From Antechinus flavipes (taxonomy: Eukaryota), in the NCBI RefSeq assembly GCF_016432865.1, contig NC_067399.1, forward strand, positions 246,264,001 through 246,328,000: 64,000 nt of DNA. The letters are read 5' to 3'. The translations under genes and the position numbers were made by a program. The first letter of the stretch is position 1, and each line of letters begins with the position of its first letter. The notes beneath the pieces are model-generated. The model had not been told where the DNA came from. It saw only the letters and a program-made list of their open reading frames with translations, and made no database searches. Positions 13,911 through 55,260 of the stretch are shown here, in pieces.

Positions 13911-14857
13911 CACTATTGATCAGAGAAATGCAAATTAAAACAACTCTGAGATACCACTACACACCTGTCAGATTGGCTAAGATGACGGGAAAAAATAACG
14001 ATGAATATTGGGAGGGGATGCAGGAAAACTGGGACACTGATGCATTGTTGGTGGAGTTGTGAACGAGTCCAACCATTCTGGAGAGCAATCTGGAATTATG
14101 CCCCAAAAGTTATCAAGCTGTGCATACCTTTTGATCCAGCAGTGTTACTTCTGGGGTTTTGTCCCAAAGAGATACTAAAGAAGGGAAAGGGACCTGTATG
14201 TGCCAAAATGTTTGTGGCAGCCCTGTTTGTAGTGGCTAGAAACTGGAAATTGAATGGATGCCCATCAGTTGGAGAATGGCTGGGTAAATTGTGGCATATG
14301 GATATTATGGAATATTATTGTTCTGTAAGAAATGACCAGCAGGATGAATACAGAGAGGCTTGGAGAGACTTACATGAACTGATGCTAAGTGAAATGAGCA
14401 GAACCCGGAGATCATTATACACTTCAACAACGATATTGTATGAGGATGTATTCTGATGGAAGTGGATTTCTTTGACAAAGAGACCCTACTGAATTTCAGT
14501 TGATAAATGATGGACAGAAGCAGCTACACCCAAAGAAAGAACACTGGGAGACAAATGTGAACTACTTGCATTTTTATTTTTCTTCCCGGGTTATTTTTAC
14601 CGTCTGAATCCAATTCTCCCTGTGCAACAAGAGAACTGTTCGGTTCTGCAAACATATATTGTATCTAGGATATACTGCAACATATTTAACATTTATAGGA
14701 CTGCTTGCCATCTAGGGGAGAGAGTGGAGAGAGGGAGGGGAAAAATCGGAACAGAAACAAGTGCAAGGGATAATGTTGTAAAAAAAAAAATTACCGTGGC
14801 ATGGATTCTGTCAATATAAAATTATTATAAAATAAAATAAAATTTAAATTTAAAAAA
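13911..14857 (+). mobile_element. Young 5'-truncated L1 (ORF2 C-terminus, 3'UTR, A-tail) with 15-bp TSD
   Basis: LLIREMQIKTTLRYHYTPVRLAKM...(+1 frameshift)...RGCRKTGTLMHCWW...; ORF2 stop at 14454-14456. TSD agtaaaataagattg at 13896-13910 and 14858-14872. Confidence 0.97.
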
Positions 14858-18720: not shown

Positions 18721-18744
18721 GTAAGAGGGAAGGGCAAGATTATT

Positions 18745-19150
18745 GTTTGTCCTTCTTTCTTCAAAAGGTCCATGATATCAGATTGGTGATGCCATGACAT
18801 GCAAATGAGTCGGATTTAAGTGAGGGAGGACTGGGTAAGGTTACCAGGCTCATTTTCTCCTCCAAAGGGTCCAAGATACAGATCAAGAGAGCTAGAGATG
18901 GCTCTGGTCACAGTGGGAGACCTTGGCCTTTTTTAGCTAAAGTCTTTAACAGGTCTCAATTTCACTGAGGCAACACCCAACCAGTGATTAAGGCTAGGTA
19001 AGAAAAGAGGCAGAGGATAGCTTCTTTTACCTAGTTTAAAAAAAAAAAAAATCCTACTGGGAAAGGGAAGACCTCAGGGTTTCTGACCAAAACAGAAACA
19101 ATTACTGTTGACACTTACTGAGTAAATCAGATCTCAAACTGTGACCAATT
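18745..19150 (+). mobile_element. WALLSI4-like (RTE-related) marsupial SINE
   Basis: gtgatgccatgacatgcaaatgagtcggatttaagtgagggaggactg...gggagaccttggcctttt...gaggcaacacccaaccagtgattaaggctaggtaag matches the recalled WALLSI4 consensus. Confidence 0.7.
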
Positions 19151-19370
19151 GGGGCTTAGCCTAGTTGCTGTTATTGGTCAATCAGTGATCTAGCTGAGCT
19201 CTCATAACTTTGTTGAATATTCTTTCTATATTAAGGCTAAGTAAATTTCATTTTATTGTTGGGATGTCTCATTCCCATCACCAAATCCCTCCCTGAGAGT
19301 CAGTGAGATCACCAAGTACAGCTAAAGAAAAGGACTTAGGGCCAGGGACTTGGTGGCCCGCACATTATTA

Positions 19371-19769
19371 CCATATATACTCGAGTATAAGCCGAGTTTT
19401 TCTGCCCAATTTTTGGGCAGAAAATCCCCTCCTCGGCTTATACTTGAGTCACTAGATAAAACATGTGTAAATATCCCTTTAAATGCCCCCCTGCTGTGTA
19501 GTATACAGCGCGAGTGCCGACTGTGATACTATAGGGGCGGCCGTTGCTACGGTGATGCAGCTGTTCCTGTAGTATCACAGTCGGTAACCGGACTGTATAC
19601 TAATGCTGGCAACCGCTCTACATACGTATACTGGCACCCGCTCTCCTCCTCTGCGGGCACCGGTGCGCTACCTAAACCTACTGATATAATAAGTTTTCCC
19701 AGATTTTTGAGTTAAAATTAGGGGCCTCGGCTTATATTCGGGTCGGCTTATACTCGAGAGTATATACGG
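19371..19769. mobile_element. Tc1/mariner-superfamily (Tc2/pogo-like TIR) MITE, 399 bp, TA TSD
   Basis: Left TIR ccatatatactcgagtataagccga; right TIR tcggcttatactcgag(ag)tatatacgg; TA on both sides (19369-70, 19770-71). About 22 CpGs. Sub-terminal TIR-motif repeats. No transposase ORF. Confidence 0.92.
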
Positions 19770-21138
19770 TAATTAATGTGCTCTGGTTGAAGATCCAGAA
19801 AAAGAGTCTGAGAAAGAATAGTCACATACTTAGGGGAAGAACTGGTGAGAACAATACCATGAAAACCTAGAGCATGTCCCGGAAGAGTCTGAGACAAAGT
19901 TGTTAGTTCTGGTGTATTTTTTTCATCCTCCTTGTCAAACATGCTTGTTATGAATTTTGCTGTGCAAATTCAGCTAATTTGCTTTGGATAGTCATAAATT
20001 AGAAAGGAGAGCCTTCATTTTAGTTTGAGTAACTTAAAAGTCCTAAGTGTCTGATACCATTCAGACCACTGAATCCCTAAGAGCCATAGTTTCTTCATAT
20101 GTCAGATAGAAGAATACTTTTCTTCTCTACCTCATAGCTTTATATAAAGAAAGTTTTAGAGTGACAAAGATCTAAATTCAAATGTTGTACCATATATATG
20201 AATGAGACTAGCTGTGTGATTCTGGGATAGTCCCCATGGTTAATTCTTTTAGCCCTGAAGTTACAGATTTTATCTTTTGTATAGGAGTTTCCATACTAAA
20301 TGTTTTATACATACTCATACCTGCAAAAGTATCCTGAGATCCTGAGAATTGTGAATAAATTGTAGTTCAGTTGTATGATCTAGGATGAGAAGATGGATAA
20401 GGGATACCCAATTGGGTCAACAAGACCCCTTCAAATGCTTTCTCCGATATATTGCTTGGCCCTGTATAATTCTCAAGACTAACTTACAAAACCTCTGTCT
20501 TGGTTACCCTACATGTAAAATGAGGATAATGATAGAACCTACTTCCACAGGGTTGTAAAGATCAAATGAGATAATATTTGTAATGTACTTTAGCACAATA
20601 CTTGACACATAATAGGACTTAATAAATGCTAATTTCTTCACCAACAGAATCACAAGTGGATAATAGCTAGAATTTAGAAGTGCTCTTATTATTTTCATGT
20701 TAAGTATGAGAAAACTAAGGCTGGTAGGTTAAGTGACTTGCCATGATATATATAGCTTAGCAACTATATATTCAGGCTGGATTTGAACTTAGCTCTCCCT
20801 AGCTCAAGTCCAGCATTCTACTGTGCTATCAAGCTGCCACATGAAAGACAAAAATCTTTTGCCTTCAAGAAATTTGTCTTCCAATGGAATATAATCATTT
20901 AGTCCACTAGCATTTACTAATTACTTGATATATTTGACACTTTGTCAAGTGCTAGGGATTTGTACAGAAAGAAGGGCAAAAACCAGCTCGCGCTCTCAAG
21001 GAGCTCAAATGTAAACATCTATGTATACAGATACTATAAATGCACACTAGATTGGTCTAAATTTCAGAGGGGAGGCACCAAGAGAAGGACAAAAAACAGC
21101 TTCTTATCGAAGAGGGTCCTGAAAGAAGCCAGAGAAGT

Positions 21139-26123: not shown

Positions 26124-26366
<243 letters not shown>

Positions 26367-47897: not shown

Positions 47898-48074
<177 letters not shown>

Positions 48075-50248: not shown

Positions 50249-51720
50249 TAAAGAAATTAAATTGAAGTCAACAAATAAGTGAGACTTTATGTAAGTCAGC
50301 TTTGGAAAACTTTAACTTTTCCTTCTCAGGAAACTAGTATGTGTTGAAGTTTAAGGGTAGAAATAATAAAAGAGTGAAAAAAGTAATTTGCTACCTTGAT
50401 TGATAAGGAGGATCTAGGGAGCCACAGAGTGAGTGTGACCTGATGCTGGTCATCTGGAAGGTCCAGTGGCTTTTCCTTCACCACCACTCCTTATGTCTTT
50501 ATCTCAGCTAAATTTTTCTGTCCAAATACCTGCTTTTGAGGCTTGAGTTAAGTGTGTGAATTTTGGTAGATAATTTTTTTCTTCCAAGCTATCAACACAT
50601 TTTTAAAAACATTAAAATCAGAAATATTAACCTGGTTTCAAGTCCCCCTCACCATCCTGGCTGCTCTATTCTTGCCATATTTCAGCTTCTCATAGTCCCT
50701 ACTAAAATGTACCGATCTTAAACCATATTTTAAACATGCAGAATAAGAAGCATCATAATACAGTGGAAATTGCTGCGATGGCCTCAATTTTCTCATCCAC
50801 AAAATGAAGAGGTTACGTTTGATGGCCTCCTAAGTCCCTTTTTTCCCCTCTAGATTCCTATAATACCACTGAGGGTAGATGATGGAAGAAGTTAACCTAT
50901 TAGAAATTATTACCAATTACTATCTAGAGGTAAGGAGCAGATGTTCCTTAATTATGTTGCAGAAATAGAGAGTTAAGTCTTTCATCTGTACCACCTTCAC
51001 TTATGGTATTTCAGTGATCTATTCCTTGAATCAACTCAGTACTTCCTCTTGGCAAGATCATCAACCTACTTCTTGGAACTGCTAATTATTAGTTGTTTTT
51101 CATCCTCTCAGTAAATACACTGGACAGGGAGTTTAGGGGCCTTGGATGTTAGTCCTTGACCCTCTACTCACTAACTAGCTGTTTGACTTGCAATGTTCAT
51201 TTCCCCCTCTATGAACTTTAATTTTCCTTCATCTATTAAGGGAGTTGAAACTAGATGACCTCCAAGGTCTCTTCCAGCTCTAAAATTCTGTGCTTCAATA
51301 AAATAAATCACCTTCTCTCCAACCCTGTCCTTTGTCTAATCATTATGGAAACTTTTCCCAGATTTTTTTCCCCCCATAATCACTTATCATCAATTCTTCC
51401 TTAGCTTATACATTTATGACATCCTAATTTTTCAAAATGAGGAATTTGATAGTATATTGTACTTTTTCTCCATGCTGTGAAATATTAACCTCAGCATGAT
51501 TTCCTTCTCTAGTCTTAACTATAATTTCTTGGGTCCAATTGTCTATAAAATGAATATTAAGAGACTGACTGGCTAAAATGCAACATTTTACATGATCCAT
51601 TTGATACCTTATCACATGGATGAAATTCTACCATGTGCAACTTTTGCTGAGAATTTTGATTTCCCCTCCCCCCCCAAGTCTTTTAGTCTGACAGTTTTTC
51701 TCTCATTTGCTTTTGAGCAG

Positions 51721-51897
51721 CATGATGTAGAAATAAATAAAATTATGTCCACAACGGCAACAAAGACAGAATCATCTGTTATGTCTAAATCTATAAGTTC
51801 TTCTTTGGATGATACTGAAGCTAAGAAAGTAATGGAAGAATGTAAAAGGCTGCAAGTAGAAGTTCAGAGGTTACAGGAGGAAAACAAACAATTTAAG
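51721..51897 (+). CDS. VAPB: VAPB coding exon 5 (linker and coiled coil)
   Basis: Acceptor ttttgagcag|CAT, donor AAG|gtaaaa. 177 nt; [59 protein letters not shown]. Confidence 0.97.
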
Positions 51898-52639
51898 GTA
51901 AAAGAGGGTTTTCTGACATTCTCCTAGTGGGTGAGCACAGACCTTCTTTGCTTTGGAAAATACAGGGAACAGTTGTTCAGTTCAGCTAATGTTTGCTGAA
52001 TGCCTGTGATGGGCAAGGTAGGGAATTGGGGGTGGAGAGGGTGGGGTTTCAAAGATTAAATCAGACACATTCCCTATCCTAAAGGAATGTATGGTCTGTT
52101 TGAGGGGAGGAGATATGGGATAAGACAGATAATAGCCTAATGGCCATAAAAGTAAAAATGGCAGCACATGCTTTGGAAAGAATGCTGGATTTGGAGCAAA
52201 TCTCATTCCTGCCATTTGCTACCTTTTGTGACTTTGGGCAAGTCCCTTAGCTGCCCTATTTCTTTATATGTACAATGAAGGGGTTGGGTTAGATGGCCTC
52301 TAAGATCCTCTCTAGCTCTTAAGTCTATGATCCTAAATGTGTGAGAGAGAAAAAGCCGGGAGAGCTTGCCTGAGAGAAATACCTCTTCTTACAGGAGGAA
52401 ACATTATTGCCCAACACAATGGTAGAGCACACCATATAATTAATATTCAACAACGGTGAAGCCTTTCAGACACAGAAATCTTTCAACTAAGGTTTTGTGG
52501 AGGATATTACTAATTAAACGTCTCAGATACTATGAATGTTATTGCAGGAATGGTGTGGATTTTTTTTTTTTTTAAGTTAAAACTTTAAAATCTTATTCAT
52601 GATCTCCAAAGTTGCAACAGTTTCTAATTTCACCTATTT

Positions 52640-55260
52640 TTTTTTCATCTCAGGGTTAGGAAAAAGGGGTTGGTGTCCTTGCTTCTCTCTCCAGACCACT
52701 CTCCTCCTCCTTTGACATCCACGCAATTCATTTACACCATCCTCTTTCCACGTTCTTGTTGCTATCATTGTTTTTGGAAGTATCTACTTTCAGGTCCCTT
52801 CCTTAGTTTTCATAACGGTGTTATTACCTAGTGCATGGATTTCCTCTCCTCTTTCTCATACATCATGCATAGGAACTTCATTATCCATGTTTATGTGTTG
52901 TAATAATACCCAAACTACATAATTCCTCCACCTCCTTCAGTACAACCTTCTACTTTTCCATCCATGTAACATTTCACATGTTAGGCTGGTCATGAGTATT
53001 CTTCAGCTCTCAGAATTTCCTAACTTTAATTCCTACCATTGGAACACAACATTCTAGCCTTTAATCTCTTTCTTTCCCTTACTCTGACTAATGGTCTTCT
53101 ACATGGCTTCCTATCCCTGGACCTTTATTCTCTCAGTTTGTCATCTCCATTCTGGCTTCAATAGCTTCTAATAACTATATTTGATCACATGATTTTTCTC
53201 TTTAATGATTCACTTTTCTTAAAACCCTTTGTCCCATTAAACTAATGCTCTTCCTATCCTGCTAATAATATTCAAACCAAAATAAAACTCACTGTATGAT
53301 TTATCTGATTGTTAAACAAAGTTTTAAAACTGCTCAGAGTAGCCCCTCTACCAGCTCAGTAAATTTTGTTGTATCACCTCAGCTGGGTTGTCAACTATTG
53401 CCACACAATTCTTAAATTCTGTTTCTCTCAACTACCTGTATCATTCCCACCAGCAATTGTTCTCTTAATCTGCTCTCTCTTTTCCCAAGCCTCTGACCTC
53501 AGCCCTTGCCCACTTAATTAACTATAGAACATCTAACCTCTTACTGTACTTCACCAAGAAGATTGTCTGTCTTAAAAGATTGAGTATTGCCTTAACAGTT
53601 CCTCTTTAATTCCTCAAAATTTGTCCATATCATCATACCAGTTCTTTTCTGTTTCCCTCCTATTTCAAAGACAAAAGTATTCTTATTCATCACTAAGATT
53701 AATTCCTTTCCCTGAACCTTATATTCCATATCTCTTAGGAACTTGCTCAAACTGTTATCCTCTTTCTCTCATGCATCTTCAGTTGCTCTCTTTCTACCAA
53801 ACCTTCTCACCTTCCTATAAATATGGTCATGTCTTCTCACTCCTAATAATCAATCCTTCTTCCTAGTCTTTTCTATCACTATCTTTCCCCAAGAGTTAAA
53901 CTTCGTGGAAAAAGTGATCTATACACGCCTTCCTGTTTGTGCCATCTTCTCTGGCATTAGCACTTTTCTCAGTGGTTTCCAAGTTTTTGATTCCACTGAC
54001 ATTTTTTCCCCCATCATCCCCAGTAGCTTTGTATTTGTAGCTTTGATGCTGTTGACCATTTTTTGCTTCTCAGTGCTTTTTATTGCTTTGTTTTTCCTTT
54101 CTTGAGGAACACAGCATAGTTTATAGAGTGTTAGCTTTGGAGTAAAAAAATTTTGTCTTGGATCATTTATTTGTGTAACATTTAAACCCTCTGAACAGCT
54201 GTTTCCTCAATTGTCCAATGAGTACAATTATACTTTTACTTTGCTCACAAAGTTTTTGTGATGCTCAAATGAGATAATAATCGTGTGTGTGGATGTGGAG
54301 GGGTGGCATTTTGCAAACATCAGTTCTATTTCAGAGGCATTTTGCCTTTTGTTTCTCCTACTTCTTCAATAACTCTTTTTCTTCTTGATTAGTTTATTTC
54401 CCTAACCTCTTAAAGTACATATTTCCAAATTTCTGCCCATGGCTCCTTTCTCTTATCTCTTTAAATTCTGTTCCTTGGTGATTTTATCTACTTTTACATG
54501 GTTTCCATAAGCATATCACCACTAATTATTGACCCTAAGATACCCAAATGCCCCACCAATATATCAAATTCACTATGTCAAAAACTATTTTTTTTTTTTG
54601 CCAAAATAAAATCCTTCACATCTGATTCTCCCTTTCTATGTACAACAAATCTAATCTAGTACAACACCCTAATTTAAGCTCTCTTTAATACTGTCCTGAA
54701 TTAAACTGCAAGTGCCTCCTAACAGGCCTTTTCATCTCCATTCATTCCCATTCTCTCTCTCCCTCTCTCCTTCTCTCCTCTCCTTCCCTCCCTTTCTCTT
54801 TTTCCTCCCCTTCTTCCTCCGTCTTTCCTTCTATTTCTTCTTTCCTTCTCTCTCTCCCTTCTTCCTCTCTTTCCTTTCCCCACCTTTTCTCCCTCTCTCT
54901 TTGTTCCTCCAATCTCCCTTCTTCCTTCCCTCTCCTTCTCTCTTCTTTCCCTCTCTCTCTTCCTCTCCTCTCTCTCCCTCCCTTCTTTTTCCCTCTTGCT
55001 TTCTCTTTCTGCTCTTCTTCCCCCATCATCATCCTCTCCCTCTCATTCATCATACCACTGCCAGATCAATCTTTCTTATGCATTTAACTAGTCATGTCAC
55101 TCCTACTCAGATACTTTTCTGTGGGCTCCCTATTACTTAACAAATCAATTTCAAACTCCTTAGCCTAGCATGCAAGTTCCTCCATAATCTGGCACCACCC
55201 TACTTTTCTAGCCTATTCTTAGCATGTTGTAATAGCTAGAATTTTAAGACTAGAATTAAG
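52640..55260 (+). mobile_element. Long degraded L2 LINE, interrupted by MIR and a polypyrimidine tract
   Basis: Pyrimidine-rich forward-L2 motifs (accactctcctcctcctttgacatc; catgtcactcctactc...ggctccctattac...caaactccttagcctagc). Confidence 0.6.
54751..55024. repeat. 274-bp polypyrimidine (CT-rich) low-complexity tract
   Basis: Only about 8 purines in 274 bp. It explains the spurious ORFs 54712..55140 and 54742..55053. Confidence 0.95.

What the first reader, a model, noticed from the sequence alone, without database searches (positions are those of the whole stretch)
19369..19771. Young CpG-rich Tc1/mariner-superfamily MITE: candidate for an uncharacterised recent DNA-transposon invasion
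Seen: 399 bp bounded by TA...TA and 25-bp TIRs (CCRTATATACTCGAGTATAAGCCGA; the right copy has a 2-bp AG insertion). About 22 CpGs in a window that is otherwise almost CpG-free, so little CpG decay and a recent insertion. The TIR core recurs internally (19432-19449 inverted; about 19726-19740 in tandem before the right TIR), as expected for multiple transposase-binding sites. No ORF. Established: TA TSD plus TIRs defines the Tc1/mariner superfamily, and CCGTA-type termini are typical of the Tc2/pogo group. Young DNA transposons are rare in mammals and usually arrive by horizontal transfer. Inference: from memory this TIR type is familiar from non-mammalian vertebrates rather than the old marsupial Tigger families, so it may mark a second horizontal transfer into this lineage alongside OC1, with an autonomous partner elsewhere in the genome. 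This is the most anomalous element in the window.
Basis: partly seen in the sequence, partly recalled or inferred. Interest (0 to 1): 0.72.

Follow-up and report, generated by a model that had tools for sequence, protein, structure and literature searches.

The report
Passer-family MITE in a marsupial intron
This is a real, fairly young 399-base non-coding "jumping gene" remnant of the known Passer (pogo) transposon family, with ends almost letter-identical to Passer elements of frogs and a gecko, so it is a new host record and a likely horizontal arrival, not a new kind of element.

Summary
Window 19371-19769 is a 399-bp non-coding element with 26-bp TIRs and TA on both sides. It carries 22 CpGs (o/e 1.0) in a window with o/e 0.11.

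A contig from a related species (flanks about 4% diverged) joins the two flanks through a single TA. This proves the TA duplication and shows the insertion is lineage-specific. A closer relative (about 1.7% diverged) has the site occupied. The insertion therefore dates to roughly 2.7-6.4 My ago.

"Uncharacterised" is not supported. The ends match published autonomous Passer (pogo superfamily, DD35D) elements:
- Gekko japonicus TIR: 24 of 26 letters.
- A 31-nt Bufo gargarizans subterminal string: 31 of 31.
- A 20-nt Xenopus laevis string: 20 of 20.

It is a Passer "PasserC"-type MITE. A distant, unnamed organism with no matching flanks carries the same ends at very high depth, which favours horizontal transfer. 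The two Passer host surveys I read list no marsupials.

This scan had already found longer Passer copies elsewhere in this genome (notes s1-180310, s1-204767). I did not see an autonomous partner myself.

Verdict: new member of a known kind, moderate interest.

The parts
19369..19370 (.). Left copy of the TA target-site duplication
   Evidence: In run X1, contig record 3 joins 19358 to 19770 through 9 letters ending in ...TTAT, leaving a single TA (tables 5c and 8).
19371..19396 (+). Left TIR, 26 nt (CCATA..., where the A at 19373 is a CpG-decay change from CCGTA)
   Evidence: (I2, I6). Matches the published Gekko japonicus Passer TIR with 2 mismatches (PMC9976928 Table S1).
19398..19424 (+). 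Perfect 12-nt-stem hairpin between the TIR and its inverted subterminal copy
   Evidence: I9. The fold of 19371-19455 gives dG -27 kcal/mol, z -11.7. Gekko and X. laevis Passer 5' ends have a hairpin in the same position with different stem letters.
19432..19451 (+). Inverted subterminal copy of the TIR core (presumed second transposase-binding site of the left end)
   Evidence: I4, 94% complementary to 19379-19396. Matches the 20-nt string from the X. laevis Passer entry 20 of 20.
19452..19713 (.). Non-coding interior holding most of the CpGs, with a 37-nt inverted repeat (19499-19535 / 19566-19602)
   Evidence: (I1), and (CpG positions; no ORF). Covered by family contigs in all four runs, including the distant organism B at lower depth (table 2; record 27, 81 nt with 7 differences).
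19714..19744 (-). Right subterminal block with a tandem second copy of the binding motif (19726-19743)
   Evidence: Matches the 31-nt string from the Bufo gargarizans Passer entry 31 of 31. (D1, I5).
19743..19769 (-). Right TIR (reads CCGTA... on the - strand) with 2 extra letters in CTCGAG(AG)
   Evidence: (I2). The two letters at about 19756 are left out in 40-50% of family depth in four runs (table 4).
19770..19771 (.). Right copy of the TA target-site duplication
   Evidence: (empty site in X1).

Best explanation
Window 19371-19769 is a miniature, non-autonomous derivative (MITE) of a Passer DNA transposon. Passer belongs to the pogo superfamily of the IS630-Tc1-mariner group, and this copy is of the 'PasserC' type known from frogs and a gecko. 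It keeps about 80 bp of the Passer 5' end (TIR, hairpin, inverted copy of the TIR core). It also keeps about 100 bp of the 3' end (two tandem copies of the core motif, then the TIR). It has no transposase gene. Inferred mechanism: a Passer DD35D transposase made by a longer copy elsewhere binds the four TATAAGCCGA-type motifs, cuts the element out and pastes it into a TA, duplicating the TA. Shown here: this copy landed in a TA inside an AT-rich near-palindrome, 6.4 kb upstream of an MSP-domain exon of a VAP-B-like gene. It did so after the split from a relative with about 4% flank divergence and before the split from one with about 1.7%. That is roughly 2.7-6.4 My ago at 3.21e-9 substitutions per site per year. 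Its CpG richness reflects that youth: at most about 3 of 25 CpGs have decayed. The family has on the order of hundreds to thousands of copies in three related marsupials. It most likely entered this lineage horizontally, because its ends, and at least part of its interior, are near-identical in a distant organism and in published amphibian and reptile elements.
For: - Anatomy and statistics.
- Empty orthologous site with a single TA in run X1 (record 3, 1099 nt, joins 19358 to 19770; flanks 32 differences in 777).
- Occupied site in X17 (record 23 covers 50 nt of the element plus 498 nt of flank; flanks 15 differences in 869).
- Source-like run X15 has 0-1 differences in its flank contigs.
- Family membership: the PS TIR and the CCGTA/CCGTA plus TA/TA columns in PMC9976928 supplements. 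Published strings tested on the window: Gekko TIR 24 of 26, Bufo 31 of 31, X. laevis 20 of 20, each a unique hit with 0 expected by chance.
- Multi-copy: summed contig depth on the element is 10^2-10^3 times that of the flanks in X15, X17 and X1 (table 2).
- This copy differs from the majority letter in all four runs at 19445, 19481, 19532, 19537, 19559 and 19710 (table 3), and at 19373 against its own right TIR. That is about 1.75%, and three of the seven changes are CpG decay.
- Distant holder: X2 (organism B) has zero depth on 1 kb of flanks, including a SINE that is very abundant in the marsupial runs, yet has the highest depth on the element ends. Several other organisms hold part of the words.
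- Rate source: PMC3621081.
Against: - No transposase or longer copy with these TIRs was seen here. The partner rests on earlier scan notes.
- Organism names are coded, so 'distant' for organism B rests only on the absence of flanks and of the SINE.
- Transposon ends are constrained by transposase binding, so end identity overstates relatedness. Interior similarity to organism B is shown by low-depth coverage and one listed 81-nt contig at 91%.
- Contig depth is not a copy number.
- The longest family contigs in the marsupial runs differ from this copy by 6-12% (table 8). The family as a whole may therefore be considerably older than this copy.
- In X15 and X17 the left junction is covered by only 24 nt inside the element, below the tool's 31-nt bridging rule.
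Confidence: 0.88

Rival explanations
1. Passer has been in marsupials for a long time by vertical descent and kept transposing. This copy is just a late jump and no horizontal transfer into this lineage is needed.
For: The longest family contigs differ from this copy by 6-12% (table 8), so older copies exist. The family is present in all three related species laid. Monotremes and several eutherian orders carry Passer (PMC9976928).
Against: Two host surveys found no marsupial Passer (no marsupial names in the supplements). The ends are 92-100% identical to anuran and gecko elements over 20-31 nt strings. A flank-less organism shares the ends and part of the interior at 90-99%. Such identity is hard to keep over more than 300 My unless the lineage was continuously active and constrained.
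Confidence: 0.15
2. It is an old insertion whose CpGs are protected locally (an unmethylated, CpG-island-like or exapted regulatory element), so CpG richness does not indicate youth.
For: CpG o/e is 1.0 inside a gene's probable first intron. The element has strong internal hairpins.
Against: The orthologous site is empty, with one TA, in a species only about 4% diverged. The copy differs from the family majority at only about 7 sites. CpG loss has begun at 19373, 19445 and 19559.
Confidence: 0.03
3. It is a TA-flanked MITE of another superfamily whose ends resemble Passer by convergence.
For: A 2-bp TA duplication alone is not unique to one family.
Against: The match is not limited to a motif. 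The TIR, the hairpin position, the inverted core copy and 31 consecutive subterminal letters all coincide with elements that encode 451-452-aa Passer transposases in Table S1 of PMC9976928.
Confidence: 0.02
4. It is an assembly artefact or foreign-DNA contamination (for example amphibian DNA) in this assembly.
For: The CpG content is foreign-looking and the ends are frog-like.
Against: Independent runs of two species have contigs running from unique flank into the element (X15 records 10 and 15; X17 records 19 and 23). Three marsupial runs carry the family at high depth.
Confidence: 0.01

Closest known systems
Passer (PS) transposons, pogo superfamily. [quoted passage not shown]
   Same: TA duplication and a 26-nt TIR starting CCGTA (24 of 26 letters with Gekko). 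The 5' end has the same order of TIR, hairpin and inverted core copy (20 of 20 with X. laevis). The 3' end has the tandem core motif followed by ...CCTAATTTT (31 of 31 with Bufo).
   Different: This element is 399 bp with no transposase ORF and the interior does not match the printed 400-nt starts of those entries. The host is a marsupial, a group absent from both published host lists. The right TIR has 2 extra letters.
Fish Passer used as a gene-transfer tool (PS TIR, CCGTATTTTCCGCACTATAAGGCGCACC; PMC9976928 Table S2).
   Same: The same TIR grammar, CCGTAT...TATAAG.CG, with a repeated subterminal motif; TA target; short TIR under 30 bp.
   Different: The TIR sequence differs at many positions. 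It belongs to a different Passer sub-lineage.
OC1_Das_NA, the hAT MITE family of dasyurid marsupials (PMC3621081).
   Same: A high-copy non-autonomous derivative of a DNA transposon that entered carnivorous marsupials horizontally and shows lineage-specific insertions with empty sites in relatives.
   Different: It belongs to the hAT superfamily, with an 8-bp duplication and different TIRs, and its estimated burst is about 17 My ago. This element is pogo/Passer with a TA duplication.
Tigger/MER-type and Stowaway-type MITEs (Tc1/mariner-pogo driven MITEs).
   Same: TA-flanked, TIR-bounded short non-coding derivatives moved in trans by a DDD/DDE transposase.
   Different: Mammalian Tigger MITEs are ancient and CpG-depleted and start CAGG... 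rather than CCGTA. Stowaway is a plant family.

Membership tests
Passer family (pogo superfamily, IS630-Tc1-mariner group) | TA target-site duplication | tested here: met
   TA lies on both sides. The empty orthologous site in run X1 has a single TA.
Passer family (pogo superfamily, IS630-Tc1-mariner group) | Short TIRs (under 30 bp) with CCGTA termini | tested here: met
   The TIR is 26 nt. The right end reads CCGTA and the left end CCATA, one CpG-decay change. The CCGTA/CCGTA column is in PMC9976928 Table S1.
Passer family (pogo superfamily, IS630-Tc1-mariner group) | Sequence identity of the ends to elements that encode confirmed Passer transposases | tested here: met
   Gekko TIR 24 of 26, Bufo 31 of 31, X. 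laevis 20 of 20. Each is a unique hit with 0 expected by chance.
Passer family (pogo superfamily, IS630-Tc1-mariner group) | DD35D catalytic domain with BrkDBD/HTH_Tnp_Tc5 DNA-binding motifs, and placement in the Passer clade of a transposase tree | not testable with these tools
   The element has no ORF. No longer copy lies in the window or in the collections scanned.
MITE (non-autonomous class II element) | Short, non-coding, TIR- and TSD-bounded | tested here: met
   399 bp, no ORF, TIR plus TA.
MITE (non-autonomous class II element) | Many homogeneous copies in the genome | tested here: inconclusive
   Summed contig depth on the element is 10^2-10^3 times the flank depth in three marsupial runs. 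The tool warns that this is not a copy number, and no genome BLAST was possible.
Horizontally transferred transposon | Between-taxon identity far above neutral expectation | tested here: inconclusive
   The ends are near-identical to frog and gecko elements and to a flank-less organism B. However, ends are constrained, the interior evidence is thin, and B's identity is coded.
Horizontally transferred transposon | Patchy host distribution and tree incongruence | not tested
   The published surveys list no marsupials. No marsupial-wide screen or transposase tree could be run here.

The most novel reading that the evidence does not exclude
A frog/gecko-type Passer transposon crossed into Australian carnivorous marsupials and was still moving less than about 6 My ago. 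Some copies may still be mobile or polymorphic in living populations. That would make it the first Tc1/mariner-pogo transfer reported for marsupials, and a candidate for the first currently active cut-and-paste transposon in a marsupial.
Probability: 0.1. Interest if true: 0.7.

Novelty: new member of a known kind. Interest (0 to 1): 0.38.

Why it matters
Recently active cut-and-paste transposons are rare in mammals. A 2013 paper on dasyurids stated that no active class II element was known in marsupials (PMC3621081).

This copy gives a dated, lineage-specific Passer insertion in a marsupial, with an empty site in a close relative. Its ends match amphibian and reptile elements. That adds a mammalian lineage to the Passer host range given in two surveys and offers a second horizontal-transfer case in dasyurids beside OC1.

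In practice, such insertions are clean presence/absence markers for the phylogeny of these species. The single copy itself has no evident function in its host gene.

Tried and rejected
- Exact TIR strings were scanned in viral contigs three times and in genome contigs. There were no hits, so no viral vector clue and no full-length copy.
- The metagenome scan gave two contigs, L001 and L002. Each has one TIR-like end (21-26 nt identical) in invertebrate-looking DNA, with no transposase ORF.
- A paper full-text search for the TIR string gave 0 papers.
- An Rfam scan of the window gave 0 matches, so the hairpins match no curated RNA family.
- The search of earlier findings by place-near, by sequence and by one word set returned nothing.
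- Gentles 2007, the opossum TE paper, is not held.
- I considered that the TIR might extend into the flanking palindrome GCACATTA...TAATGTGC. I rejected this because that sequence is contiguous in the empty site.
- I considered piggyBac or Harbinger (TTAA or TWA targets). I rejected these because the empty site shows a 2-bp TA duplication.
- Papers on Tigger, mariner and devil TEs describe no matching family in marsupials.

Full report
**1. Observation**

The sequence shows TA at 19369-70, then a 399-bp element at 19371-19769, then TA at 19770-71.

- The terminal inverted repeat is real. The arms 19373-19395 and 19743-19765 are 91% complementary (I2). A script alignment pairs 25 positions with one mismatch (A/G at 19373) and a 2-letter surplus in the right arm.
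- The 20-nt TIR core occurs only at these two places in 64 kb, against 0 expected in shuffles.
- The core recurs inside the element: inverted at 19432-19449, and in tandem with the right TIR at 19726-19743 (I4, I5, D1).
- The 403-bp span holds 22 CpGs (o/e 1.00). The whole window holds 217 (o/e 0.108), and no other 400-bp stretch has more than 7.
- No ORF that overlaps the element exceeds 64 aa.
- The left 85 nt folds into a hairpin of about 70 nt (dG -27 kcal/mol, z -11.7).

**2. Insertion, boundaries and age**

I laid Logan contigs of four public runs on 18870-20270.

- **Run X15 (organism E)** has flank contigs with 0 and 1 differences (records 10 and 15). It is therefore the source species or nearly so.
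- **Run X17 (organism F)** differs in the flanks at 15 of 869 letters. Its record 23 runs from 50 nt inside the element into 498 nt of right flank, so the site is occupied there. The left junction is covered by only 24 nt inside the element, below the tool's 31-nt rule.
- **Run X1 (organism A)** differs in the flanks at 32 of 777 letters. Its record 3 (1099 nt) aligns to 19080-19358 and to 19770-20267, with nine letters (ACACATTAT) between (tables 5c and 8).

The nine letters correspond to window 19359-19368 with a small change. The contig in A therefore reads flank, one TA, flank. This is an empty site. It proves three things: the TA duplication, the exact ends, and that the near-palindromic flanks are the target rather than part of the TIR.

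The rate used for dasyurids in PMC3621081 is 3.21e-9 per site per year. At that rate, 1.7% and 4.1% pairwise divergence give about 2.7 and 6.4 My. The insertion falls between these two dates.

Independently, nearly all family contigs in all four runs read another letter at 19445, 19481, 19532, 19537, 19559 and 19710 (table 3). In addition, 19373 differs from the element's own right TIR. That makes about 7 private changes in 399 letters (1.75%), three of them CpG decay, which fits the same age. The count is a lower bound because the table was truncated.

**3. Family size**

Summed contig depth on the element is 10^2 to 10^3 times the single-copy flank depth in X15, X17 and X1 (table 2). The tool warns that this is not a copy number, so I take it only as "many copies".

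The longest family contigs differ from this copy by 6-12% (table 8). De Bruijn contigs favour diverged copies, but older members clearly exist. The family is therefore older than this copy, and it was present before species A split off.

**4. What it is**

Two earlier notes of this scan on other parts of the same genome called longer elements "Passer (pogo)" and named the host antechinus (s1-180310 and s1-204767). I treated that as a lead and tested it on my element.

The Passer paper (PMC9976928) gives the fish PS TIR in its primer table. Its Table S1 lists for each element the termini (CCGTA/CCGTA), the TA/TA duplication and the first 400 letters.

- The entries for Gekko japonicus (2298 bp, 452 aa) and Xenopus laevis (2659 bp, 452 aa) begin with the same order of parts as my left end: TIR, T-rich hairpin, inverted core copy.
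- The entries for X. tropicalis PasserC-1 (1968 bp, 451 aa) and Bufo gargarizans are printed from the other end. They begin like the reverse complement of my right end: TIR, second tandem motif, ...CCTAATTTT.

I tested short strings from that table on the window:

| Published string | Window position | Match |
|---|---|---|
| Gekko 26-nt TIR | 19371-19396 | 2 mismatches |
| Bufo 31-nt string | 19714-19744, minus strand | 0 mismatches |
| X. laevis 20-nt string | 19432-19451 | 0 mismatches |

Each was a unique hit with none expected by chance. The hairpin stems differ between species while staying paired (by eye), so the structure rather than the letters is kept there.

The element is therefore an internally deleted Passer of the PasserC frog/gecko type. 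The defining transposase features (DD35D, BrkDBD plus HTH_Tnp_Tc5; PMC7386202) cannot be tested on a non-coding copy.

**5. Mechanism**

Established for the family: Passer moves by cut-and-paste into TA and needs only its TIRs in cis (PMC9976928).

Inferred here: the four TATAAGCCGA-type motifs are the transposase-binding sites, two per end, inverted at the left and tandem at the right. A transposase from a longer copy moved this MITE in trans.

Not shown here: the partner itself.

**6. Horizontal transfer**

- Run X2 (organism B, name coded) has no depth at all on about 1 kb of flanks. That includes a SINE at 18870-19150 that reaches 10^4-10^5 depth in the three marsupial runs. Yet X2 has the highest depth of all on the element ends, lower but non-zero depth in the centre, and an 81-nt central contig with 7 differences.
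- The majority letters at the six diagnostic sites are the same in B as in the marsupials.
- Further coded organisms and three "bat metagenome" runs hold 14-16% of the sampled words. I did not lay these and do not interpret them.
- Together with the frog and gecko string identities, this favours horizontal transfer.

Cautions: ends are under functional constraint, the interior evidence is thin, and B is unnamed.

The two host surveys list no marsupials. Gao 2020 lists Chiroptera and Afrotheria. Wang 2023 lists Monotremata, Afrotheria, Rodentia, Insectivora, Chiroptera and Cetartiodactyla. No marsupial names appear in the held supplements. The devil TE papers I read describe only hAT transfers. 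I could not consult Dfam or Repbase.

**7. Context**

On the + strand the window carries MSP-domain exons at 26193-26345 and about 47913-48059 (Pfam PF00635, E 1.4e-17 and 9.4e-07). It also carries a coiled-coil exon near 51.8 kb. From memory these read like VAP-B. The MITE lies 6.4 kb upstream of the first of these exons, probably in intron 1. Nothing suggests a function for it there.

**8. Verdict**

It is wrong on "uncharacterised". This is a new member (and a new host lineage in print, as far as I could read) of a known kind, and the scan had already met the same family elsewhere in this genome.

Noticed in passing
window 18740-19055: A poly-A-tailed SINE-like repeat sits just upstream of the MITE. 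It has very high contig depth in the three marsupial runs and none in organism B (table 2). From memory it resembles a marsupial RTE/CORE-type SINE. It served here as a lineage marker.
   Followed up: partly
window 26193-26345, 47913-48059, about 51700-51900 (+): Exons of a VAP-type gene: two MSP-domain exons (Pfam PF00635) and a coiled-coil exon. From memory it reads like VAP-B. The MITE is probably in its intron 1.
   Followed up: partly
window 14001-14456 (+): A 151-aa ORF that from memory looks like the C-terminal part of L1 ORF2. It coincides with the second-richest CpG stretch of the window.
   Followed up: no
window 19359-19368 and 19772-19781: The target site is an AT-rich near-palindrome (CACATTAT-TA-ATTAATGTG). 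It may reflect a structural target preference of the transposase or may be chance. Only one site was seen.
   Followed up: no
L001:932-1010 and L002:1376-1347 (minus strand): Two environmental metagenome contigs carry one end each with 21-26 letters identical to this TIR. L001 also has a degenerate inverted core copy downstream. The surrounding DNA looks like an aquatic invertebrate: L001 ORF 1179-1430(-) resembles, from memory, a non-LTR retrotransposon tail. So this TIR type also exists outside vertebrates.
   Followed up: partly
runs X6-X14: Small runs of two coded organisms and three 'bat metagenome' runs hold 14-16% of the element's sampled words. These could be host, prey or parasite DNA carrying a related Passer end.
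   Followed up: no
window 19756-19758: The 2 extra letters in the right TIR are absent from only 40-50% of family depth in each of four runs, including the distant organism B (table 4). Part of the rest is soft-clipped contigs, so it is unclear whether a TIR variant with the two letters is shared across hosts.
   Followed up: partly
window 54712-55140: A CT-rich low-complexity tandem array with periods 60 and 101 produces a spurious 142-aa ORF.
   Followed up: no
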